DNA from: Stylophora pistillata
Taxonomy: Eukaryota
Length of the DNA stretch: 64,000 nucleotides
Assembly: GCF_002571385.2 (NCBI RefSeq)
Contig: NW_019218057.1
Coordinates: 354,995-418,994 of the forward strand
Reading direction: 5' to 3'
The translations under genes and the position numbers were made by a program. Below the pieces are notes generated by a model that saw nothing but the letters and a program-made list of their open reading frames with translations, did no database searches and had not been told where the DNA came from. Position 1 is the stretch's first letter, and each line of letters begins with the position of its first letter. Below are positions 12,786 through 64,000 of this stretch, one piece after another.

Positions 12786-13751
12786 ATGAATAATTCTAGT
12801 TTTGCAACGCCTACTCTTTACAGTCCAAGCCTGCCCTGTTCTAACGTGGTGTCCACGCTATTTACAGTGATTATATCCACTGTCACATTCGCGGCTCTGA
12901 TTGGCAATGTTCTTGTCATTGCAAGTTTTCTCATAACTCCTAACTTAAGGACAAGCACTAATTATTACATAATCAACATGGCCATTTCTGACCTCCTTTG
13001 CGCATGCTTCAATTGGCCACTATATGCAGTTGAAGGAATGCTGACAAGAGCCGAGTTCTTCAACCAACGTTCGGCCTTAATTCTCTGTAAACTGGGAATT
13101 TGCTTCAGGGAAATTTCACAAGTGGTGTCCGTGTTATGCTTGGTTCTAACATCCGCAGACAGATATGCTGCTATCGTCCACCCTATGAGGCCAACGGTAA
13201 TGAGAAATGGCAAAGTTAGAGTTATTTTATTGTTGCTTACTTGGATTATACCTTTTGGCTTTGCTTACCCGTATTACATGTTCACTGAAGTTGTAAAAGT
13301 AAACAACCAAACTTTCTGTAGAGTAATTTGGAATATATCAACACACACAGTTTTTAATGCTGTTGGATTTGTTATATTCTATTGTATACCTCTTAGTGTC
13401 TTAATTATTCTACATACTCGCATCACAAAGACACTTAAAAATCGCCCAGATATAGAAAACACAGTCCAAGAACAGCAAATCAGAAGAAGAAGAGAGCAGC
13501 ATCAGAAAATTATGAAAATCTTGACATCGATTGTTGCCGGCTTCTTTATTTGTTGGACACCCCTTTGCGTTTATTTGGCATTGAAAATGTTTTATCCAGG
13601 GTTGTTTCTTCAAGATAGATGCTTCTTACTGTTGGGTTTGTTTTTCTACGTGTTTCCCTCACTCAGCACAGCAATCAATCCTTTTATTCTTTTCCAGTTT
13701 AGTTCAAAATTTCGACTGGCGATGAAAAAAATTTCGTTTTCCTTTTGTTGA
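12786..13751 (+). CDS. Class A GPCR, neuropeptide receptor-like, ~321 aa (probable start MNNSS at 12786)
   Basis: 7TM; DRY, CWTP, NPFIL; start chosen by alignment with the paralog ATG at 20468. Confidence 0.9.
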   Translation: MNNSSFATPTLYSPSLPCSNVVSTLFTVIISTVTFAALIGNVLVIASFLITPNLRTSTNYYIINMAISDLLCACFNWPLYAVEGMLTRAEFFNQRSALILCKLGICFREISQVVSVLCLVLTSADRYAAIVHPMRPTVMRNGKVRVILLLLTWIIPFGFAYPYYMFTEVVKVNNQTFCRVIWNISTHTVFNAVGFVIFYCIPLSVLIILHTRITKTLKNRPDIENTVQEQQIRRRREQHQKIMKILTSIVAGFFICWTPLCVYLALKMFYPGLFLQDRCFLLLGLFFYVFPSLSTAINPFILFQFSSKFRLAMKKISFSFC

Positions 13752-14295: not shown

Positions 14296-15440
14296 AGTTT
14301 CATTAGCAGGGAAAAATCACGAAATAAGATGATGGACAGCTACGAGTGTTAAGAAAATCAAAGAGAGAAAAACAAGAAAGAGAGTAACACAAAAAAGATT
14401 ATTGAGAAACTCACTTATTTGTGGTTTCGGTCTGAGTATTATAAAAATATATATTCTAATGTAAATACACATATTGTAAAATACATATTTCAAATGCTTC
14501 TCCGTCGTCAACAAATTCGCGACTTTTCTTGACCTATCTGTAATCATTCAAATCCATACCAGTTATAAATGTTGAACAAGAAATGCCGGGTTTTAGCCCT
14601 CGTAAGCCAACAAAGTCGGGAATTCAAAAAAGAGGTATGAACTAAAGTGTGGTCGCTTACGAGAGCGCCGGCTCTCTGACGTAAGCGACCACGCGATGAA
14701 ACGATAGTCTTTAATCTGACAAGAAAATATAACTTGTGAGCTGTCATTAGCTGTTGGTAGTCTAATGGCCATTAGAATAATAATCACTTAATCTTTGCTT
14801 GCCTCCGGTTCACAAATGTACAGCTAGCTCAGTAATCCACATGGACCGAAAACTTCCCAGAGTTACTTTTGTTCAGAAAACAATGTCTCATAAATGAAAA
14901 CAACTTCCTTATCTTAAAGAAAACACGTTTTCAATCCCCATAGTGTTTGTTTTTCCCTCCCCTGCGGTTATCCACCTTCTTGTTTGTGTAGCATTAACTT
15001 CCTGGCATCGTTGTCATCTCCTTTCCCCTGTTTCTCATTCTCTCTTTTTTCGTTTTAAATCTTCCTGGCCTAGCAAGAAGTTTTATCTGACCACCTTCCT
15101 TTTATTCAATGTCACGACTCGGAAATCAAGTTATAGCGAAGACTGAACATAAAATAATGGATAGGAAAAACACCATTCTGCACCCTGAGACTTTTTGTTA
15201 CAAAAGATGACTTCGTTAATTAATTTGGCTAGATAGCGTAACCGTGTTGTCTCGATATATTTAAGTTCACGCAGCGATTCTAGGAACTATACTGAAAACC
15301 TGTTCAAAATGACCTTTAAAAGCTTTTTTGGCTGGCAATTTTAGCTCTCATGACGACAGACGAAGGTGTGCGTGATCAAAATAATATTGTCCATATCCTA
15401 CCATATCCATAACGTGAACATTGCATGCGCTATCCCCGTA

Positions 15441-16210
15441 ACAACAACAACAACAACAACAACTTTATTAGGTACTTCTATAAGTAGTACATGGCATTAC
15501 CTAAGTAAGAATAAGTAACAATAATTATTTAATATCATTTTGTCTTTAACAGAACTTCTTGTCTGATATTCATTATTTGGAATATAAAAGCAGAAATGAA
15601 TCTACATATAGACGGATTAGCGTTATTAAAAAGGAATAACACTTTAGAGTTATGATCAAAGTTTTCAAAGCAAGGATACTTTCTTGCGATTTTGTTGTTA
15701 AGTTCTAATCGAAAACTATCATACAAAGGACAACAAAAAAGCACATGTTTTTCATCTTCAATTTCATTTGAATGGCAGAAAGAACAGATTCTTTGATTGA
15801 CTGCGGTCTTTGGAGTCTTGTATCTTCCCGTTTGAATGTGTAATTTATGATTGCCTAGACGGAATTTATTAATGGCAATTTGTGTTGTGGATTGTTTATT
15901 AGATCTAAAAATTCTGTTTTCTTAGTGTCTTTTTTGAATGAGGAGTAAAAGTCTAATTTTCTGTTTGCGTTGATTAACATTAATTGGTGGTCCTCATAGA
16001 TCTTCCTCTTTAACTTTAAATGAGTAGTTCTCATATTTGTATCGTTATTTTTCAAGTTTATACAACTTGGATCACATCTTTTCAATAAGTTATTAATTCT
16101 CACCGTCAAACTTAAGAGGTTTCTATCAGCCAATTCTTCGGAGAGGAATAAGCATTGTTTTGCAATATCAGTGTCTGGTAAGTTGCGTAGATGAATCCAG
16201 AACTTTCAGT
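15441..16210 (-). mobile_element. 5'-truncated non-LTR retrotransposon 3' end (RTE-X-like), frameshifted
   Basis: Minus-strand translation FRLGNHKLHIQTGRY..RICSFCHSNEIEDEKHVLFCCPLYDSFR (C-terminal CxxC..HxxxxC knuckle of LINE ORF2); AATAAA followed by a (TTG)n tail at 15441-15468. Confidence 0.8.
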
Positions 16211-20467: not shown

Positions 20468-21482
20468 ATGAATAATTCCGGTTTTGCAACGCCTTCTATT
20501 TACAGTCCAAGCCTGCCCTGTTCTAACGTGGTGTCCACGCTATTTACAGTGATTAAATCCATTGTCACATTCGCGGCTCTGATTGGCAATGTTCTTGTCA
20601 TTGCAAGTTTTCTCAAAACTCCTAACTTAACGACAAGCACTAATTATTACATAATCAACATGGCCATGTCTGACCTCCTTTGCACATGCTTCAATTGGCC
20701 ACTATACGCAGTTGGAATGCTGACAAGAGCTGAGTTCTTCAACCAACGTTCGGCCTTAATTCTCTGTAAACTGGGAATTTTCTTCAGGGTAATTTCACAA
20801 GTAGTGTCCGTGTTATGCTTGGTTCTAACATCCGCAGAGAGATATGTTGCTATCGTTCACCCGATGAGCACAACGGTAATGAGAAATGGCAAAGTTAGAG
20901 TTATTTTATTGTTGCTTACTTGGATTATACCTTTTGGCTTTGCTTACCCGTATTACATGTTCGCTGAAGTTGTGAAAGTAAACAACCAAACTTTCTGTAG
21001 AGTAATTTGGAATATATCAGCACACGCAGATTTTAATGCTGCTGGATTTGTTATATTCTATTGTATACGTCTTATTCTCATAATTATTCTATATACTCGC
21101 ATCACAAAGACACTTCAAAATCGCTCAGATATAGAAAACGCAACCCAAGAACAGCAAATCAGAAGAAGAAGAGAGCAACATCAGAAAGTTTATGAAAATC
21201 TTGACATCTATTGTTGTCGGTTTCTTTATTTGTTGGACACCCCTTTACGTTTATTTGGCATTGAAAACGTTTTATTCAGGGTTGTTTCTTCAAGATAAAC
21301 GCTTCCTACTGGCAGGCTTGTTTTTCTACTTATTTCCCTCACTCAGCACAGCAATCAATCCTTTTATTCTTTTCCAGTTTAGTTCAAAATTTCGACTGGC
21401 GATGAAAAACGTTCGTATTCCTTTTGTTGATTTCAGTAAATATGGCCGGTTTCTGAGCATGCCCAGGAATCATGAGGGTTAG
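20468..21482 (+). pseudogene. Frameshifted GPCR paralog of 12786-13751
   Basis: One extra base at ~21189 (CAGAAAGTTTATG vs CAGAAAATTATG) splits TM1-5 from TM6-7; also TM5 Pro>Arg, ECL3 Cys>Arg and a one-codon deletion. Confidence 0.85.
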
Positions 21483-24804: not shown

Positions 24805-25833
24805 TTGATGATGAGTTCAAGTGATAGTGATGCGCCATGCCCCAACACCATTTCCATATTTTTCACAACATCTATGGTCTTAGTAAGCATGGTTGCTGTG
24901 CTCGGAAATATTTTAGTGATCGTCGCAGTGTACAAAACTCAAAGTCTTAGGACCAGTAGGAATTACTACTACGTCAACATGGCCATTTCTGATTTCCTTT
25001 CAAGCCTCGCTATTTGGCCGCTTTACCTTACAGACGAAATCATAACAAGCAAAGGAAGTCTGTTCAAAGGGTCTCTGGCAACTGCTGGCTGCAAAGTGGG
25101 TGTATTTTTCAGAATGACGTCAGTTATTGTGTCAATTCTGAGCCTGGTGTTGATCGCTGTTGATAGATTTATCGCTACTGTCTTTCCATTAAAATCAACG
25201 TTGATCGTTGGGAAAGTCAGGGCATTTCTACTCTTTGCGACATGGACGATATCAATGGCATACTGCATCCCAATGCTGTATTATTCAAGAGCCGAAGACT
25301 TTGGTCAGGAAACTTATTGCAAATTTGCATGGAATAGCATTGCTCTCATGATTTATTACATCATTGGTTTGGTGTTGTTTGAAATCGCGCCGATTATTGT
25401 CATTGTCATTCTTTACACGCGCGTTATGAGGGTTTTGCATCAGAGGATTAAACCAGGAACTGGTGAGAGGGGCAGTAGTTCCTATCAAAATCGGAGAAAT
25501 GAGCAAAACCGAAACTTTATGAAGATATTCAAATCAATTGTTGTTACTTTTTTCGTTTCTTTTTCTTTCTTTTTCGTTTACTTGATTTTTAAGATGTCAT
25601 TTCCTGAACTTTTCGACAAAGACAAATGCAAGTGGATTCTTGGGTTCGCTTATTTCGTGTTTCCATCGCTCAGTTCAGTAATTAATCCTATTATTTTATT
25701 TGCATTCAGCACGAATTTCCGACAAGCTCTGCGTACATTGTGGATGTTTTCTTTAAGGAGATTCTTTTTATGTGGCAGAAAAGAGAAAAGAGAACGAGAT
25801 AAAACTGAAGGCCCTTCAGCAGAAGAAACATAA
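24805..25833 (+). CDS. Class A GPCR, neuropeptide receptor-like, ~342 aa (ATG at 24808)
   Basis: 7TM; GN, MAISD, DRF, NPIIL; TM6 CWxP motif absent. Confidence 0.9.
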   Translation: MMMSSSDSDAPCPNTISIFFTTSMVLVSMVAVLGNILVIVAVYKTQSLRTSRNYYYVNMAISDFLSSLAIWPLYLTDEIITSKGSLFKGSLATAGCKVGVFFRMTSVIVSILSLVLIAVDRFIATVFPLKSTLIVGKVRAFLLFATWTISMAYCIPMLYYSRAEDFGQETYCKFAWNSIALMIYYIIGLVLFEIAPIIVIVILYTRVMRVLHQRIKPGTGERGSSSYQNRRNEQNRNFMKIFKSIVVTFFVSFSFFFVYLIFKMSFPELFDKDKCKWILGFAYFVFPSLSSVINPIILFAFSTNFRQALRTLWMFSLRRFFLCGRKEKRERDKTEGPSAEET

Positions 25834-26212
25834 TTAAAGCCAATGGTGCGTAGAATATATGATATGAAACGAGGAATTTAATTAAAGCGATATAAGTTTG
25901 CAGAGTTTTTCAAAACATTTATCTCATTTTATAATTTTGAGCTTATACTGAGCTGATTTCATTCTTAACATACGTTGGGGTTTCATCACTTCAATTAAGC
26001 ACAGACTCTTGAAAAAAATTATCCGTTATTTTATCCTTCAGACAGAGTCTTCAGAGAAATCCCGCCTGCCTTCAGGTAAAGTTATATGCCTATGACTTCA
26101 CATACATGGAATATCACACACATGTTTAAATTAAAAAAAATTAAATATTTTTCCTTTGTGACGCTTGTCCAACTCATGCTTTCGGTACACACTTCCAAAT
26201 CACACAAGATTT

Positions 26213-26497
26213 TAGAGCGCCTTTTGATTGGGTGTGTCATATGAGCAAAGCCAAACTAACCACAACGGTCAATCAGAAGAAAGAAAATACCTTAAGAGCC
26301 AATGAGAGCTCAAAATAAAAACGAGCAAATTGCCTGAAGTGGGAAAAAATGCGCACGACCAAATCGTGATTGGCTTTAGTTTTGTATCTGATTGGTCGAG
26401 ATTATGGTGTGAGTTTTCTGGACCAATCACAGAGCGAAGTAAAGCAAAACCAACGCAATCTCGGAGGACTTTCGACACTGAATTGAAGATTGCTCCT
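26213..26497. mobile_element. Degenerate MITE rich in CCAATCA/TGATTGG
   Basis: Imperfect TIRs TAGAGCGCCTTTTGATTGGGTGT / ACACTGAATTGAAGATTGCTCCT; interrupts the 38-bp repeat tract. Confidence 0.6.
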
Positions 26498-26499
26498 TG

Positions 26500-26820
26500 G
26501 TTGTAGCGTACTCCCCCAAATCATACACACTCAAATTATGCTTTTGACACACCTTCCAAGTTTCACTAGAGCTCGTCACACGCATACTCCAAACTACATC
26601 ACAGGTCGCTCATGCTTTAGGTAATCACTCTTAAGTCACATCGCTTCTCATACTTTTACATCACACGAGATATTATACTTCGAACACACACTTCTGAATC
26701 ACACAAGATATCATACTTAGAGTACACACCTCTGAATCACACAAGATATCATACTTAGAGCAGACACTTCTAAATCACACGAGAGATTGTGCTTCAGGCA
26801 CACTCTTTCACACAATCATA
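26500..26820. repeat. Degenerate 38-bp minisatellite (CACACCTCTGAATCACACAAGATATCATACTTAGAGTA)
   Basis: Clear 38-bp period at 26693/26731; degenerate copies on both sides. Confidence 0.75.
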
Positions 26821-26896
26821 AGAGTTCGCTGTTCAAACAGAGGAATTTGACCGAATATTCTATCTGACTGAGAAGTCTCAATCATCATTGAGTTTC

Positions 26897-28006
26897 TTAA
26901 AGTTCATCACGAACCATAGCCAGCGTGAGTTTATCAGTGATGTCAACAAAACCACCAATGCATTCACTCATTTTCATCTTCAGCTTTTGGCCTTTCTTAG
27001 CGTCAGCCATGTGAAGTACACAAATGGTAAGGTCTTTGTAGACTCGGAAATAAAGCGATTTTGATTTCAAGTCTTTGACGACAGACCACACTGTATAATC
27101 AGAGGACGTTCCTCGGGGTATATCGACTGTATTCAAGATGTGGAAAGCCTTGATAACTGCTTCTTTACCTGTCTTGACTGGATCAGAAAAATGCGCCATA
27201 ATAGCCGCGCGTACAAATCTCGATGGCGGTGTGAAGTCACCGGGTATTCCCAGAAGTCCACTTCCTTGACCAGTAGGTTTGAACGTCACTTTGCCCAACT
27301 CCAGGGCATCATGGGCCGATTTGGAAAGTTCAACATAATTGCGAATGTTTATTAGATGGAAATCATATGGCGGGGAATTGGTTACGACGCCAAGAGTGTT
27401 GTTGAACACCATTCTCCCCTGTTCAGTAAACTCAATAACGATAGCATCTCCGGAAGCGTCCACGATCGAGTAGTGTAGTTGAAAGATTCCCTTTAACCAC
27501 TCTGGGACATTGGCTTCCCATACGAGAGGGAAAGAATCCTTCTCCAAAGCATCCCTTAATTCCTGGACTGTCCCAAAGTTTCCAAGAATCCACAACGGAA
27601 ACTGCAAAGAAGACACCGCCATGTGGCATTTTTCAACTGGAATTTTCTGGAATTGGGCGAAGCCAACGAAGAGGTTTGCAGCAAGAGAAAGACCAACTTC
27701 ATTTAAACCATCGGTAGCTATGGGCATGTCTAAATCATTCAAAACGTCTAAAACGTCGACGTATGCGATGATATATTTATTCTGCCAATGCAAAGACGAA
27801 TGAAGGAAGCATTCTTTGCTAGGAACCGATGTATGAGAATACTCCCTGGGTTCTACAACGAGGTAATAACCCAAAGCACCGATGAACTCCATACTCCGAC
27901 CGACGACCACTGAGTCATCTTCGGAAGACAAGCTGAATTCAGTGCATGCGTTTGAAACGAAAAACTTGCACTGTATCACGAAGACCATGAAAAGAACCTT
28001 CATCAT
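26897..28006 (-). CDS. Ntn hydrolase, choloylglycine hydrolase/penicillin V acylase family (bacterial type), 369 aa, signal peptide and C-terminal RDEL
   Basis: MMKVLFMVFVIQCKFFVSNA|CTEF (Cys1 at 27946); motifs GRSMEF, DGLNEVGLS, HYSIVDASG, VTNSPPYDFH, GIPGDFTPPSRFVRA, AFHILNTVDIP; no introns in the CDS. Confidence 0.92.
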   Translation of the reverse strand: MMKVLFMVFVIQCKFFVSNACTEFSLSSEDDSVVVGRSMEFIGALGYYLVVEPREYSHTSVPSKECFLHSSLHWQNKYIIAYVDVLDVLNDLDMPIATDGLNEVGLSLAANLFVGFAQFQKIPVEKCHMAVSSLQFPLWILGNFGTVQELRDALEKDSFPLVWEANVPEWLKGIFQLHYSIVDASGDAIVIEFTEQGRMVFNNTLGVVTNSPPYDFHLINIRNYVELSKSAHDALELGKVTFKPTGQGSGLLGIPGDFTPPSRFVRAAIMAHFSDPVKTGKEAVIKAFHILNTVDIPRGTSSDYTVWSVVKDLKSKSLYFRVYKDLTICVLHMADAKKGQKLKMKMSECIGGFVDITDKLTLAMVRDEL

Positions 28007-28023
28007 CAAGAGGAGATCTAAAC

Positions 28024-28269
28024 CTACAATTAAACAAAATTTAATATCAAGTTTACATAAATATTTATAGCATGTAGCATGTAGCATGTTTTTGTTGCCG
28101 TTTGAAGATCGAACGAATTAAGAAGATTAAGTTGATACGTACCTCGTTTCCTTCCTTTCGAAGACTGTTTAAAAAGAAATTTAAGTATTCTGCGGGTAAA
28201 ATGATGTGAAGTAACTAGAAACTTTTTCATAAACAGGAACTTATAAGGCTGATTTATTGGATGACGTCA
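28024..28269 (-). promoter_or_regulatory. Putative Pol II promoter (CRE, CCAAT, TATAA) and 5'-UTR intron of the Ntn hydrolase
   Basis: TGACGTCA 28262-28269; CCAAT 28256-28260; TATAA 28241-28245; donor GAG|GTACGT at 28142 and acceptor TTGTAG| at 28024. Confidence 0.5.
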
Positions 28270-29714
28270 GATCCAAGTGACCGTGAAGGTATGAAGTGCA
28301 ACGAAGTTTAAGGTTTAAGGTTCATTTATTTCACACTATTTACTAAAAATTAACATAGAATAAAGTACAGATTATAAAAATGAGTGTGAAGGTCAAAGTA
28401 GCGAAGGCTTTCTAGTTGGCCACCACCTACTTATAGATAAACAAGGAAATGGCACTGAGCTTTATTAACGTTTGTGGGTAACAGCCCTGGGGCTTAGGCA
28501 CAATGAATTATCGTGTGGAAAATTATTCTGATCGTCTTTTGTGGTGCGGCGTTATCTCTCAAATTTGTGGTGCTTCGAAATTTCCAAAACTAAGTACACA
28601 AGGCTTTGGTTTGAATCTCTCACCTTCCTTGCGCCACGGGGAGAGACCTGACTTTTGGTAGCCTTGACACTCTTTCTTAAATATTCCCGAAGTCAGTTCA
28701 ATGAAACTGGTCTCACGTCCCTCTATGACTAAGGTTTTAACCTCATTCGAAAGCTGCGGATCTTAAAAGATGATCGAGTCATCGATCGGAACCGGGAATA
28801 ATCCTTCAGGTTAATCCGTACCTGTTAATTTGCTCAGTTTCTCTGGCTTGGCGTCAACATTTTATATCTATTTCAGTCAGTGTTATTTGTATTATTCAGT
28901 ACAACAGCTATCAAAACTAATGTAGTTTCTAATTGAACAACTTGTTTTCATCGTTGTATGCTTGTGAAGCCAAAACTGGGGAGAATGAGAGTATCCGCTG
29001 GCCATCTGGACAAGTAAAAGAGAATTTCCAGAATCGTTGCACTTATTGTTATCTAGCATACAAATTCTAAGTTAGATTTAAAAGAGTGGTTTCCAGCCTC
29101 ACAATTTCGTTTTGTAAAGCAAGGCGATGACTCTTTAAGGAACAATAGATAAAATGTCACCGACACCGGAAATTAATTCGTTTTACAAATTTGAATTGCG
29201 TCAACGAAATCTCTAGAACTTCCTGCTTTTGGTCTCAGCCCACTCAAACTTATACCATTCTCTGTGCCTTTTCATAGTCGCAGAATTTACTTACTCCGTA
29301 TCATTTTATCAACTAATCAATGCATCTGATTTCCGCTATACTTGTCCCTTCTAAACTACATTCAACCAAACTGAGCATCCAACAGTAAAATGGCATTTAT
29401 CATTGTGATAAACCAAGTCATTCCTGTTTGGTTTGAACTCTAAACTCATGTAAATACTTTCTCTATTCCCATGAATTTGTATATACAGCTGATAAATGTC
29501 ACAATTTTTGATAGTATTTGATAATATACCGCTGTAAGCCAGTGGATGTGACACCATTATGCAGCGCACATCAATCCGCGCGCCAAATATCAGGAATAAC
29601 GTTTCCTAAATTGTTTATTCTTATTTTTTGTTTTATCTTTCATAACGTCGAAGGATAGCAGGTGCAGTGTGAAAATTCAAGCCTCTGTTTTTAGGCCTCC
29701 ATTTAAACCAAGCA

Positions 29715-30704
29715 ATGGATAACTCGAGTTACTATGTTCTTGAGGGTCAGCCGAATTGCTCCCCTATCGCCTCTACTTTGATCACAACAACTATTTCTGT
29801 TGTTAGCATGTTTGCGTTTGTCGGCAATATTTTGGTGACTGCAGTTTTTCTGATAAACAAAACCCTCAGGACAAGTACAAATTATTTCATCGTTAACATG
29901 GCCGTCGGGGATCTATTGTCCACTGCATGTGTTCACATGGCCCGCCGCTGTACGCCACTGAGGGGATGCAGTCCGATAGACATTTCATCGATGATCCAGT
30001 GGCTACAGCTGTTTGTAAAATAAGTCTGTATTTCAGAGGCGTGTCACAGGTTATTTCAGTTTTCGGCCTGGTCGGTATAGTCGTGAGAGGTTCATTGCCG
30101 TAGTTCATCCACTCAAGGCTAAAGCTCTGATGGAAAGGACTCTACCTCGAGCTGTTTTATTGCCACTGACCTGGATCATCCCTTCAGCACTTGCTGTGCC
30201 ATACCTCAGATTCTTAAAGATCGTTACAGTTGATGAGAATCAACCACTTTGCTCGTTTTCGTGGGGAGCAAAGAACCGCTATGTAGTCTTTGCGATTGGA
30301 TTGTCATGTTCTACTGTACTCCCTTGATTTTGATCATCCTTCTTTATACCAAAATCATAAAACGTTTGAAGCAATCAAGACGCGTCACTGATGAACAAGA
30401 CCAAGCGCTGAAAAAGATAAGAAGAAGGCATCGCAAACAAAACCAAATGTTATGAAGGTCTTCGGATCAATTGTCGCGGTCTTTTCCGTCGGCTGGACTT
30501 CAATATCTGTGTATCTAATATCACTTGAAGTGCTTCACCCATCACAAGACACTGAGAGACTCTTGTTTGCTCGTTTTGGCTTTATTATTTTACATACCGC
30601 CATCTTTACCAGCAGCAATTAACCCCGTCATTCTTTTCGTGTCGAGCACCAATTTCCTTAATGCTCTGAAAGTTATGTTCAATCGTTTTTCGCGCCCAAA
30701 GTAG
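29715..30704 (+). pseudogene. Degraded GPCR paralog with several frameshifts
   Basis: Fragments VGN..LRTSTNYFIVNMAVGDL, VCKISLYFRGVSQV, LTWIIP, FYCTPL and AINPVILF lie in shifting frames. Confidence 0.88.
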
Positions 30705-46800: not shown

Positions 46801-48111
46801 TGAGTACCGAACTGATTTACGCGGAAACCTCCAGATTTTAGGTTCTCTTAAAACACCTTTCTCAGCTGTTAAAATATTATGGGGAAACCAGTTGTTCGGG
46901 AGCCAGTGATGAGCCCAAAAAAGGCATTGACCTGTTTGAACCTTTGCCGGAAACCGAAACAAGTATTAAGAAAGAGTTCGTTGATGTCGGTATACAATGC
47001 GATCTGGAATTTAGTTGGTTAAATATTCCCTGAACATCTACGGCGAGTGTGGGAGAGACAAAAATCTGTCTAAAGAAATCTTCGTAGAGAATCTTTGCCA
47101 GCCCCGCTTGCTGCTTTCTTTGAGAAACCCTGCAAAGAAGTAGCAGTTAGACAATTTGTGTCACGGCTTACACAGCGGTGGATTTGTAATCAAAGGTCCT
47201 TAGAGAAACATTTTTTTACTTTGAATAGAAATTAAAAGATCCAGAGATCAGNNNNNNNNNNNNNNNNNNNNNNNNNNNNNNNNNNNNNNNNNNNNNNNNN
47301 NNNNNNNNNNNNNNNNNNNNNNNNNNNNNNNNNNNNNNNNNNNNNNNNNNNNNNNNNNNNNNNNNNNNNNNNNNNNNNNNNNNNNNNNNNNNNNNNNNNN
47401 NNNNNNNNNNNNNNNNNNNNNNNNNNNNNNNNNNNNNNNNNNNNNNNNNNNNNNNNNNNNNNNNNNNNNNNNNNNNNNNNNNNNNNNNNNNNNNNNNNNN
47501 NNNNNNNNNNNNNNNNNNNNNNNNNNNNNNNNNNNNNNNNNNNNNNNNNNNNNNNNNNNNNNNNNNNNNNNNNNNNNNNNNNNNNNNNNNNNNNNNNNNN
47601 NNNNNNNNNNNNNNNNNNNNNNNNNNNNNNNNNNNNNNNNNNNNNNNNNNNNNNNNNNNNNNNNNNNNNNNNNNNNNNNNNNNNNNNNNNNNNNNNNNNN
47701 NNNNNNNNNNNNNNNNNNNNNNNNNNNNNNNNNNNNNNNNNNNNNNNNNNNNNNNNNNNNNNNNNNNNNNNNNNNNNNNNNNNNNNNNNNNNNNNNNNNN
47801 NNNNNNNNNNNNNNNNNNNNNNNNNNNNNNNNNNNNNNNNNNNNNNNNNNNNNNNNNNNNNNNNNNNNNNNNNNNNNNNNNNNNNNNNNNNNNNNNNNNN
47901 NNNNNNNNNNNNNNNNNNNNNNNNNNNNNNNNNNNNNNNNNNNNNNNNNNNNNNNNNNNNNNNNNNNNNNNNNNNNNNNNNNNNNNNNNNNNNNNNNNNN
48001 NNNNNNNNNNNNNNNNNNNNNNNNNNNNNNNNNNNNNNNNNNNNNNNNNNNNNNNNNNNNNNNNNNNNNNNNNNNNNNNNNNNNCAGATTAAAATAAAAC
48101 ATTTCGCTTAC

Positions 48112-63898: not shown

Positions 63899-64000
63899 GT
63901 AAGCTGTNNNNNNNNNNNNNNNNNNNNNNNAAAGCAGCATTACGTAGCATTCTTATTAACTGACCACTAAGTTTTGTAGTCCGCGTGAAGCCATTGCTAT

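What the first reader, a model, noticed from the sequence alone, without database searches (positions are those of the whole stretch)
26897..28006. Bacterial-type penicillin V acylase/bile salt hydrolase homolog inside an animal GPCR cluster: candidate horizontally acquired quorum-quenching enzyme
Seen: intronless CDS with the catalytic residue pattern of the choloylglycine hydrolase family (Cys1; Arg in GRSME; Asn in TNSPP; Arg in SRFVRA), flanked by host genes and host repeats. Known: this family is mainly bacterial, and some penicillin V acylases cleave N-acyl homoserine lactones. From memory, unverified here: a laterally acquired Ntn hydrolase with such activity has been reported in Acropora, so the family may not be new. 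Inference: the host modulates microbiome signalling. Its position among orphan GPCRs could hint at a sense-and-degrade locus, but may be coincidental.
Basis: partly seen in the sequence, partly recalled or inferred. Interest (0 to 1): 0.8.

Follow-up and report, generated by a model that had tools for sequence, protein, structure and literature searches.

The report
Coral copy of bacterial-type acylase gene
This is a real, expressed coral (Stylophora pistillata) gene for a bacterial-type amide-cleaving enzyme, a sister copy of the already published Acropora enzyme AmNtNH1 that destroys bacterial quorum signals, so it is a new member of a known family, and its place beside receptor genes looks coincidental.

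Summary
Window 26897-28006 (-) is one open exon encoding a 369-aa choloylglycine-hydrolase-family (PVA/BSH) Cys-Ntn amidase (Pfam E 3.5e-59). It has Cys21 directly after a signal peptide, and R37, N210 and R263 are in place.

It is a genuine coral gene:
- DNA depth equals that of the flanks.
- A host SINE-like repeat and GPCR and Ig genes flank it.
- polyA RNA contigs cover it and show a spliced 119-nt GT..AG intron in the 5' leader.
- GC3 is host-like.

The family is not new. NCBI already names this protein "Penicillin acylase [Stylophora pistillata]". A "penicillin amidase", probably this family, was listed as an anthozoan gene of bacterial origin in 2016. Mason et al. 2024 described the Acropora relative AmNtNH1 as an AHL-inactivating quorum-quenching enzyme.

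In my trees all cnidarian copies form one clade nested among bacterial sequences. The window gene belongs to a different subclade from AmNtNH1 (48% identity), so it is a paralogue whose substrate is untested.

Nearly all cnidarian copies, including AmNtNH1's gene, carry a short C-terminal extension ending in a KDEL-type tail (RDEL here). They also share a cnidarian-specific cysteine pair. None of the bacterial relatives examined has either. This points to residence in the ER or early secretory pathway.

The "sense-and-degrade" link to the GPCRs has no support. Novelty: new member of a known kind.

The parts
26897..28006 (-). Single-exon CDS of 369 aa plus stop: choloylglycine-hydrolase-family Cys-Ntn amidase (PVA/BSH type)
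   Evidence: It is 100% identical to NCBI 'Penicillin acylase [Stylophora pistillata]' except for that model's N-terminus.
27947..28006 (-). Predicted signal peptide MMKVLFMVFVIQCKFFVSNA. Cleavage after SNA would expose Cys21 as the N-terminal nucleophile.
   Evidence: Hydrophobic core with mean Kyte-Doolittle 2.2. Small residues at -3 and -1. The same layout is seen in all homologues. SignalP was not available.
27944..27946 (-). Codon of Cys21, the catalytic N-terminal nucleophile
   Evidence: Aligns to Cys1 of 3pva. Invariant in 34 sequences.
26900..26911 (-). C-terminal RDEL, a KDEL-type ER-retrieval motif, at the end of a tail of about 9 residues that the bacterial relatives lack
   Evidence: The tail has low pLDDT, so it is probably flexible.
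27626..27811 (-). Span holding the cnidarian-specific cysteine pair Cys66 (ECF) and Cys127 (EKCH), a putative disulfide
   Evidence: Both Cys are present in the anthozoan and hydrozoan sequences and absent from the bacterial rows of alignment A1. The disulfide is inferred and not tested, because no model coordinates were available.
27728..27754 (-). Stylophora-specific in-frame insertion (residues 85-93, VLDVLNDLD, a small tandem duplication) in the loop before the DGxNE motif
   Evidence: Alignment A1: six extra residues relative to all other rows. Sequence.
28024..28142 (-). Spliceosomal intron (119 nt, GT..AG) in the 5' leader
   Evidence: polyA RNA contig of run X2 (1743 nt, depth 46) joins 28143 to 28023. 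The aligner reported 28008/28141 with 22 intervening letters, which resolve to 28009-28021 plus a 9-nt allele insertion. The run X4 contig is unspliced.
28143..28285 (-). 5' exon 1 (minimum extent; the X4 contigs reach 28319-28359). It holds an upstream ATG at 28228-28230 that is in frame with the CDS after splicing.
   Evidence: Frame arithmetic: 88 + 17 = 105 nt, open.
26433..26896 (-). 3' UTR, at least this far. The RNA contigs stop at the repeat.
   Evidence: X2 and X4 contigs.
26300..26466 (.). Host interspersed repeat (about 166 nt, SINE/MITE-like) just beyond or within the 3' UTR
   Evidence: At least 1960 first-look candidates genome-wide, the 39 other copies scored at 79-84% identity. 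DNA word depth of about 35,000 against about 137 in the gene.

Best explanation
The locus is a bona fide Stylophora pistillata nuclear gene for a cysteine N-terminal-nucleophile amidase of the choloylglycine hydrolase (penicillin V acylase / bile salt hydrolase) family. It descends from one ancient bacterium-to-cnidarian gene transfer that was followed by duplication. It belongs to a scleractinian subfamily (clade I, with Acropora XP_029192333 and XP_015754726-8) that is paralogous to the subfamily holding the published quorum-quenching enzyme AmNtNH1.

Proposed mechanism:
1. The mRNA, with a spliced 5' leader, is translated into the ER.
2. Signal peptidase cuts after SNA and exposes Cys21 as the free N-terminus.
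3. The Cys thiol, activated by its own alpha-amine and helped by R37, E40, N210 and R263, attacks the amide bond of an N-acyl compound. This releases the amine and then the fatty or aryl acid through a thioester intermediate.
4. The RDEL tail keeps or recycles the enzyme in the ER and early secretory pathway.

The most likely substrates are membrane-permeant N-acyl homoserine lactones, by analogy with AmNtNH1. A shifted specificity is plausible because the pocket loops differ.

Shown: family, fold, catalytic residues, integration in the genome, transcription, splicing and phylogenetic position. Inferred: processing, localisation and substrate.

The confidence below is for the whole statement. 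The identity and origin part alone is about 0.9. AHL as the substrate is about 0.5.
For: Family and fold:
- Pfam CBAH E 3.5e-59.
- PDB PVA/BSH hits to E 2.9e-43, with the catalytic residues aligned.
- AF2 model with pLDDT 84 and pTM 0.85. Foldseek top hits are PVA/BSH, TM 0.66-0.86.

Host gene:
- DNA depth is even, 129-137, over the gene and flanks in a 2024 run, and its contigs match with 0 differences.
- polyA RNA contigs in two studies; GT..AG intron in the leader.
- GC3 is 0.47, against 0.39-0.45 for the neighbouring GPCRs.
- The host repeat has at least 1960 candidate copies.

Phylogeny:
- Cnidarian sequences form one clade (SH-aLRT 99-100).
- With Firmicutes BSH as root, they nest inside bacteria; a 100* branch separates them from other bacterial groups.
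- The window gene sits in a 100* clade with Acropora XP_029192333, away from AmNtNH1's gene.
- Identity to AmNtNH1's gene product is 48%.

Eukaryote-specific additions:
- 71 of 88 cnidarian-type sequences end in a [KRHQ]x[ED][LF]-type tail, against 0 of 80 genome-derived bacterial proteins.
- A Cys pair and an FPLVW insertion are cnidarian-specific.

Function of the relative:
- AmNtNH1 is described as an AHL-inactivating hydrolase, induced by immune challenge and expressed at settlement (PMC12496222, PMC12924552, both citing Mason et al. 2024).
- A PVA-type protein was detected by mass spectrometry in Pocillopora acuta planulae (PMC12960093).
Against: - No assay exists for this paralogue. Loop 1 (MEFIGALGYY against SDYGKEMFSN in AmNtNH1's gene product) and a Stylophora-specific 6-residue insertion next to the pocket differ.
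- The solved PVAs known to cleave AHLs (Gram-negative type, 4wl2 and 5j9r; which ones cleave AHLs is my own knowledge) are much more distant (E 2.8e-13 and 2e-17) than the Gram-positive PVA/BSH.
- An ER-retrieval tail fits poorly with action in external mucus.
- The translation start is ambiguous. An in-frame upstream AUG would add 35 basic residues before the signal peptide.
- The trees are quick searches with SH-aLRT support only. The branches joining cnidarians to their nearest bacteria score 90-91, which is not strong. The careful search did not finish.
- That XP_029207486.1 (AmNtNH1) is the same gene as XP_029207487.2/489.2 is inferred from adjacent isoform accession numbers.
Confidence: 0.6

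Rival explanations
1. The enzyme is an ER-resident housekeeping amidase acting on endogenous lipid amides (N-acyl amino acids or taurines, ceramide-like or sterol conjugates), or an N-acyl transferase, and not a quorum-quenching enzyme.
For: - The RDEL tail is canonical and the tail is conserved family-wide.
- Several anciently diverged paralogues suggest sub-functionalisation.
- The pocket loops differ from AmNtNH1's gene product.
- NCBI names some coral copies 'bile salt hydrolase/transferase-like'.
Against: - AmNtNH1's own gene product also ends in a KDEL-like KEEL, yet it is reported to inactivate AHLs (PMC12496222).
- No endogenous substrate is known.
- AHLs cross membranes, so an ER enzyme could still meet them.
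Confidence: 0.25
2. The gene and the adjacent GPCRs form a functional 'sense-and-degrade' locus for bacterial signals.
For: Four rhodopsin-type GPCR ORFs lie within 24 kb, the nearest ending 1 kb away. That GPCR is also present in the same polyA library (X2 contig 9).
Against: - The nearest GPCR and the acylase are convergent, 3' end to 3' end, with separate transcripts and a SINE between them.
- The paralogues on contig C482 have no GPCR-like ORF within 40 kb. Their neighbours are coiled-coil and glycosyltransferase-like ORFs. This was judged by reading the ORFs, not by a Pfam scan.
- The GPCRs are tandem duplicates of each other, one of them truncated.
- Intronless class-A GPCR arrays are common in cnidarian genomes (my own knowledge).
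Confidence: 0.03
3. The ORF is bacterial contamination or a misassembly, not coral DNA.
For: Bacterial-type protein; single-exon CDS.
Against: - DNA depth equals that of the flanks, and independent 2024 contigs match exactly up to the host repeats on both sides.
- polyA RNA with a spliceosomal intron.
- Nearest bacterial identity is only 34-40%, while coral orthologues reach 62-78%.
- A eukaryotic RDEL tail.
- The contig is 423 kb long and carries animal genes.
Confidence: 0.01
4. The gene is a vertically inherited eukaryotic Ntn hydrolase related to NAAA or acid ceramidase.
For: The same Pfam family name covers NAAA-type proteins. An Atlas cluster is named 'Choloylglycine hydrolase/NAAA C-terminal domain'.
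Against: - No NAAA or acid ceramidase chain appears among the 32 PDB hits at E <= 1e-3.
- The Cys follows the signal peptide directly, with no alpha-subunit.
- The clade nests within bacterial PVA/BSH-like sequences.
Confidence: 0.03

Closest known systems
AmNtNH1 of Acropora millepora (XP_029207486.1; Mason et al. 2024, Curr Biol 34:3226, doi 10.1016/j.cub.2024.05.073; the paper is not held here and is known only through citing papers)
   Same: - Same cnidarian clade of CBAH-family Cys-Ntn hydrolases.
- Signal peptide followed by Cys.
- Same Arg/Asn/Arg constellation.
- Cnidarian Cys pair.
- KDEL-like C-terminus (KEEL against RDEL).
- Bacterial ancestry.
   Different: - Different subclade: 48% identity, separated by 100* branches.
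- Glu40 instead of Asp.
- Pocket loop 1 is divergent, and there is a 6-residue insertion.
- No activity or expression-pattern data exist for the Stylophora gene.
Penicillin V acylase of Lysinibacillus sphaericus (PDB 3pva, 2pva) and bile salt hydrolase of Clostridium perfringens (2bjf)
   Same: - Fold: Foldseek E 1e-29, TM 0.7-0.8.
- Cys1 nucleophile, Arg17, Asn175, Arg228.
- Single-domain protein of about 330 residues.
   Different: - Only 28-30% identity.
- Position 82 (Tyr in PVA, Asn in BSH) is Leu here.
- Asp20 is Glu here.
- The bacterial enzymes are cytoplasmic, with no signal peptide, Cys pair or ER tail.
- It scores below the NCBIfam equivalog cutoffs for both.
Exported choloylglycine-hydrolase family proteins of diverse environmental bacteria (Ectothiorhodospiraceae, Thermodesulfobacteriota, Planctomycetota, Chlamydiota, Omnitrophota MAGs)
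   Same: - They are the closest non-cnidarian relatives, at 34-42% identity.
- Signal peptide directly before Cys.
- GRSME(F/W) with Glu.
- They end at the shared ...VD(V/I)TDKL motif.
   Different: - No C-terminal xDEL extension, no Cys pair and no FPLVW insertion.
- The donor lineage is not resolved, because the nearest relatives are spread over many phyla.
Mammalian paraoxonase PON2 (an analogy from my own knowledge, not tested here)
   Same: An intracellular, ER-associated host enzyme that inactivates membrane-permeant AHLs. It is a precedent for quorum quenching from inside the secretory pathway.
   Different: Unrelated fold (a six-bladed propeller lactonase). It opens the lactone ring instead of cleaving the amide.

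Membership tests
Choloylglycine hydrolase family (Pfam PF02275; PVA/BSH Cys-Ntn hydrolases) | Profile match above the curated threshold over the whole domain | tested here: met
   201.4 bits against a cutoff of 20.4; residues 21-335 match profile positions 1-305 of 316.
Choloylglycine hydrolase family (Pfam PF02275; PVA/BSH Cys-Ntn hydrolases) | Catalytic Cys that becomes residue 1 of the mature protein | tested here: inconclusive
   Cys21 aligns to Cys1 and lies directly after a signal-peptide-like leader ending in SNA. Actual processing cannot be shown in silico, and the upstream in-frame AUG leaves the leader's length open.
Choloylglycine hydrolase family (Pfam PF02275; PVA/BSH Cys-Ntn hydrolases) | Arg17 / Asp20 / Asn175 / Arg228 constellation (L. 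sphaericus PVA numbering) | tested here: met
   R37, N210 and R263 are invariant. Asp20 is the conservative Glu40, which is shared by at least 90% of alignment A1, including the bacterial relatives.
Choloylglycine hydrolase family (Pfam PF02275; PVA/BSH Cys-Ntn hydrolases) | Alpha-beta-beta-alpha Ntn fold | tested here: met
   AF2 model with pLDDT 83.9. All top Foldseek PDB hits are PVA/BSH, with probability 1.00.
Bile salt hydrolase equivalog (NF038245) / penicillin V amidase YxeI equivalog (NF058572) | Score above the NCBIfam equivalog cutoff | tested here: not met
   186 bits against 350, and 172 bits against 600. It should not be named either BSH or PVA in the strict sense.
Cnidarian NtNH hydrolases (AmNtNH1 family) | Membership of the monophyletic cnidarian clade | tested here: met
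   SH-aLRT 99-100 for the cnidarian bipartition in three tree runs. It shares the Cys pair, the insertion and the xDEL tail.
Cnidarian NtNH hydrolases (AmNtNH1 family) | Orthology to AmNtNH1 itself | tested here: not met
   The window gene groups (100*) with Acropora XP_029192333 and XP_015754726-8. AmNtNH1's gene is in another 100* group with the Montipora and A. palmata copies. Identity is 48%.
Cnidarian NtNH hydrolases (AmNtNH1 family) | AHL acylase (quorum-quenching) activity | not testable with these tools
   Needs an enzyme assay. Reported only for AmNtNH1, through citing papers (PMC12496222, PMC12924552).
Eukaryotic NAAA / acid ceramidase | Detectable sequence kinship, and an internal autoproteolytic Cys that separates alpha and beta subunits | tested here: not met
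   No NAAA or ASAH1 chain at E <= 1e-3 among the PDB hits. Only a 20-residue leader precedes the Cys.
Soluble ER-resident proteins with a KDEL-type retrieval signal | N-terminal signal peptide plus a C-terminal [KRHQSA][DENQ]EL | tested here: met
   Hydrophobic leader and a terminal RDEL. The tail is flexible in the model. The motif class is conserved in 71 of 88 cnidarian-type sequences.
Soluble ER-resident proteins with a KDEL-type retrieval signal | Actual ER localisation | not testable with these tools
   Needs imaging or fractionation.
Horizontally acquired gene of bacterial origin | Recipient clade nested within donor-domain diversity | tested here: met
   With Firmicutes BSH as root, the cnidarian clade lies several nodes inside bacteria, one of them a 100* branch. 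The nearest-neighbour nodes score only 90-91. No other eukaryote is named among the top 120 hits. Absence from other eukaryotes was not searched for exhaustively.

The most novel reading that the evidence does not exclude
The whole cnidarian NtNH family, AmNtNH1 included, is held in the ER and early secretory pathway by a KDEL-type tail that was added after the transfer. It would then work as an intracellular filter that destroys membrane-permeant bacterial acyl-amide signals (PON2-like logic), or as a modifier of endogenous lipid amides, rather than as a secreted mucus enzyme. The clade I paralogue in this window would have shifted to a substrate other than the AHLs cleaved by AmNtNH1.
Probability: 0.3. 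Interest if true: 0.55.

Novelty: new member of a known kind. Interest (0 to 1): 0.3.

Why it matters
The locus is a clean example of a bacterial enzyme gene domesticated by an animal. It has gained a spliced leader, a signal peptide in eukaryotic context, a Cys pair and an ER-retrieval tail, and it has duplicated. It belongs to a family already implicated in how corals control their microbiome.

The practical value is modest. It identifies an uncharacterised paralogue, and a second intact one on contig C482, that should be included when coral quorum quenching is assayed. It also raises the family-wide KDEL-like tail as a question about where these enzymes act. It does not open a new kind of biology.

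Tried and rejected
The GPCR-adjacency test therefore rests only on the paralogue locus in the same genome.
- The Atlas could not read the window sequence. The stored NCBI model gave only family-level neighbours.
- Mason et al. 2024 is not held. Its content is known only through citing papers, so I cannot say whether they already noted the KDEL-like tails or which cnidarian homologues they assayed.
- The 'careful' IQ-TREE search did not finish in 449 s. All tree statements rest on quick searches with SH-aLRT support.
- Absence from non-cnidarian eukaryotes is therefore not established here.
- The NCBI model's first exon (MTGLIAAGKDG, 30602-30631) was checked and rejected. No RNA depth is seen there in three RNA runs.
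- I looked for the 3' repeat elsewhere in the window and found none. The genome-wide search found many copies.
The splice lies only in the leader, and the reading frame across it was worked out by arithmetic on window coordinates.
- N runs (47252-48084 and 63908-63930, and those on C482) were left as they are.
- The broken third copy on C482 was described but not repaired.
- No contig looked human.
Full report
**1. Observation**

The minus strand of the window holds an ORF at 26897..28087. From the ATG at 28006 it encodes 369 aa.
- Pfam assigns residues 21-335 to PF02275, the choloylglycine hydrolase family of linear amide C-N hydrolases: E 3.5e-59, 201 bits against a cutoff of 20.4.
- NCBIfam finds the bile-salt-hydrolase and penicillin-V-amidase equivalog models, but far below their cutoffs (186 against 350 bits; 172 against 600 bits). 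It is a family member, not a strict BSH or PVA.
- Thirty-two distinct PDB sequences match. The best are Lysinibacillus sphaericus PVA (3pva, E 2.9e-43) and Clostridium perfringens BSH (2bjf). No NAAA or acid ceramidase chain is among them.
Cys21 aligns to Cys1, R37 to Arg17, N210 to Asn175 and R263 to Arg228. PVA Asp20 is Glu40.
- An AlphaFold2 model (pLDDT 83.9, pTM 0.85) finds only PVA/BSH structures at the top of a Foldseek PDB search (E to 6e-30, TM 0.66-0.86).

**2. It is coral DNA, and it is expressed**

The protein is 100% identical, apart from the N-terminus, to NCBI 'Penicillin acylase [Stylophora pistillata]', on a 423-kb contig. The window is G000:C273:354995-418994.

Neighbours:
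- Four rhodopsin-type GPCR ORFs at 3.7, 12.8, 20.5 (truncated) and 24.8 kb.
- Ig-domain exons and a Ser/Thr-rich ORF at 35-42 kb.
- A LINE endonuclease/RT at 58-61 kb.

DNA evidence from a 2024 run (X18; library type not on record, read as DNA from its even depth over genes and intergenic stretches):
- Word depth is 129-137 across the gene and its flanks.
- Contigs match with 0 differences at 26431-28420 and from 28403 onward.
- They break only at two repeats.
- The 3' repeat (26300-26466) has at least 1960 candidate copies at about 80% identity across the genome.

RNA evidence:
- polyA RNA-seq libraries from several studies hold 26-39% of the words of a 4.8-kb probe, about the size of one mRNA.
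- A 1743-nt contig of run X2 (depth 46) covers 26433..28021. It then jumps to 28143..28285.
- After allowing for the GT ambiguity, this is a 119-nt GT..AG intron (28142..28024) in the 5' leader.
- The same contig carries a 9-nt insertion allele two bases upstream of the ATG.
- Run X4 has the unspliced form.
- No RNA covers 30.5-30.7 kb, so the first exon of the NCBI model (MTGLIAAGKDG at 30602-30631) is unsupported.

After splicing, an upstream ATG at 28230 is in frame with the CDS (88 + 17 = 105 nt, open). It would add 35 basic residues. Orthologues start at the MMKV-equivalent Met, which I take as the likelier start, but this is open.

GC3 of the CDS is 0.47, against 0.39-0.45 for the neighbouring GPCRs and a window GC of 0.39. 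The gene therefore has host composition.

The CDS is one exon and was searched as it stands.

**3. The family in Cnidaria and beyond**

The word search returned 3311 relatives. The top hits are:
- Corals at 44-78% identity: Acropora, Montipora, Oculina, Desmophyllum and Pocillopora, several copies each.
- Then Hydractinia, at 41%.
- Then metagenomic bacterial proteins at 39-43%.

The Stylophora genome has two more loci on contig C482. One is an intact single-exon copy at 14902-16005 (55% identity). The other is a decayed copy at 3.5-10.3 kb, with a TAA, microsatellite expansion and assembly gaps.

A scan of one genome per prokaryotic species found at least 590 relatives. The best 80 have only 34-40% identity. 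They are spread over Gammaproteobacteria, Thermodesulfobacteriota, Planctomycetota, Chlamydiota, Melainabacteria, Verrucomicrobiota, Omnitrophota, Acidobacteriota and one Methanosarcinales MAG. No donor can be named.

**4. Phylogeny**

- In an 88-row tree, the 43 cnidarian-type rows are one side of a branch with SH-aLRT 99.
- I added Firmicutes BSHs (Ligilactobacillus, Bacillus, Enterococcus, Clostridium), enterobacterial 'linear amide C-N hydrolases', and Legionella and E. coli plasmid homologues, all taken from annotated plasmid records.
- With these, the cnidarian clade (100*) lies several nodes inside the bacterial radiation when rooted on the Firmicutes.
- One 100* branch separates it, plus 22 bacteria, from the Planctomycetaceae/Legionella/Parachlamydiaceae group. 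The nearest nodes score 90-91.
- Within the anthozoan sequences, the window gene sits in a 100* clade with unnamed pocilloporid-like sequences (P0002 at 78%, P0003) and Acropora XP_029192333, XP_015779110 and XP_015754726/8/690.
- The intact C482 copy groups with the Pocillopora, Oculina and Desmophyllum copies.
- The gene of AmNtNH1 groups with the Montipora and A. palmata copies.

These are quick searches. The careful search did not finish.

**5. What is already known**

- Bhattacharya et al. 2016 (PMC4878875, Table 1, no. 27) list a 'penicillin amidase' (Seriatopora_10994) as an anthozoan-ancestor gene of bacterial origin with support 100. I could not verify that it is this family, but Seriatopora is a pocilloporid and the name fits.
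- Mason et al. 2024 (Curr Biol 34:3226) is not held here. According to citing papers it describes AmNtNH1 (XP_029207486.1) of Acropora millepora as a quorum-quenching hydrolase. It is reported to inactivate AHLs, to be induced by immune challenge, and to be expressed around settlement (PMC12924552 and PMC12496222).
- The 90% cluster of P0068/P0150 contains A. millepora XP_029207487.2 and XP_029207489.2, which I take to be isoforms of the same gene. Its product is 48% identical to the window protein.
- A PVA-type protein was detected by mass spectrometry in Pocillopora acuta planulae (PMC12960093).

**6. Eukaryote-specific features**

Alignment A1 shows that bacterial relatives end at a shared ...VD(V/I)TDKL motif. 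Cnidarian proteins continue for roughly 8-18 residues and end in a KDEL-type motif.
- Of 88 cnidarian-type sequences, 71 end in [KRHQ]x[ED][LF]: HTEL 31, HDEF 15, HDEL 6, RTEL 5, RDEL 3, KEEL 2 (the AmNtNH1 group), KDEL 1, and others.
- Most of the exceptions are truncated or odd gene models. The two Hydractinia proteins are full-length exceptions.
- None of 80 genome-derived bacterial proteins has such a tail.
- The tail is flexible in the model.
- Cnidarian sequences also share two cysteines (Cys66 and Cys127 here) and a three-residue insertion (D/xFPLVW) that the bacterial rows lack.

The shared features support a single origin of the cnidarian genes and adaptation to the oxidising secretory pathway. 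The disulfide is an inference.

I had seen it independently, and I extend it here to the whole family.

**7. Mechanism**

Shown: family, fold, catalytic residues, leader, tail, transcription.

Inferred, in order:
1. Co-translational entry into the ER.
2. Signal-peptidase cleavage after SNA, which exposes Cys21.
3. Thioester (acyl-enzyme) catalysis on an N-acyl amide.
4. Retrieval by the KDEL receptor.

By analogy with AmNtNH1 the favoured substrate class is AHLs. These cross membranes, so they could reach an ER enzyme. This would resemble mammalian PON2 in logic (my own knowledge).

Cautions:
- Loop 1 and a Stylophora-specific six-residue insertion before the DGxNE motif differ from AmNtNH1's gene product.
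- Position 82 (Tyr in PVA, Asn in BSH) is Leu here.
- The solved Gram-negative PVAs known to cleave AHLs are more distant than the Gram-positive PVA/BSH.

An endogenous lipid-amide role is the main rival.

**8. The GPCR idea**

- The nearest GPCR ORF (24805-25833, +) and the acylase (-) are convergent and separated by about 1 kb that contains the SINE. They have separate RNA contigs.
- The first 40 kb of C482, where the paralogues lie, has no ORF that reads as a GPCR. This was judged by inspection, without a Pfam scan.

I rate a functional link at about 3%.

**9. Verdict**

This is a real, expressed, domesticated gene of bacterial origin. It is an uncharacterised paralogue within the published cnidarian NtNH/PVA-like family, so it is a new member of a known kind. 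Interest is 0.3. The family-wide ER-retrieval tail is the one point that may add to what is published, and I could not check whether Mason et al. already discuss it.

Noticed in passing
window 30602-30631 (-): The first exon of the NCBI gene model (MTGLIAAGKDG) lies 2.6 kb upstream. It has no RNA depth in three RNA runs. The RNA-supported leader exon is at 28143-28285 or further. The public model's N-terminus is probably wrong.
   Followed up: partly
window 28008/28009: A 9-nt insertion allele (TGCGAGCTG on the minus strand), two bases upstream of the ATG, in the RNA contig of run X2. It keeps the frame with the upstream ATG at 28230.
   Followed up: partly
window 20468-21298 (+): The third GPCR ORF is truncated (276 aa; the 7tm_1 match stops at profile position 201 of 260). 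It is a near-copy of the ORF at 12786-13751 and is probably a pseudogene within the tandem array.
   Followed up: no
window 25900-26401 (+): A 1963-nt polyA RNA contig (run X2, depth 24) runs from the GPCR at 24.8 kb through its 3' UTR up to the SINE. This GPCR is transcribed, and its transcript converges on the acylase transcript at the repeat.
   Followed up: no
G000:C482:3500-10400 (L009, L011): A third, decayed copy of the acylase gene. Its N-terminal part is replaced by a (ICCSIFF)n-like microsatellite, it has a TAA after ...RSDG, its C-terminal part lies 5.7 kb away, and a further C-terminal fragment sits beside an assembly gap. It may be a pseudogene or a misassembled tandem array. I left it as it is.
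   Followed up: partly
G000:C482:14902-16005 (+) (L011:4902-6005): An intact single-exon paralogue (368 aa, 55% identity, ends in RTEL) in the clade shared with Pocillopora, Oculina and Desmophyllum. It is a second candidate enzyme to assay.
   Followed up: partly
loci L018, L019, L021, L023, L066, L068, L073, L084, L087, L091, L099: Many of the closer bacterial relatives come from Chlamydiota and Legionella, which are intracellular bacteria of eukaryotes. This may bear on the route of transfer, but in the tree they were not the nearest neighbours of the cnidarian clade.
   Followed up: no
window 28292-28475: A second, moderately repeated element (DNA word depth about 3300 against 130) just upstream of the leader exon. 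Short-read contigs break here.
   Followed up: no
P0098, P0101 (Hydractinia): The hydrozoan homologues lack the xDEL tail. One ends in a hydrophobic stretch (…IFIVFFLVIALF) that looks like a GPI-anchor signal or a tail anchor, so localisation may differ between cnidarian classes.
   Followed up: no
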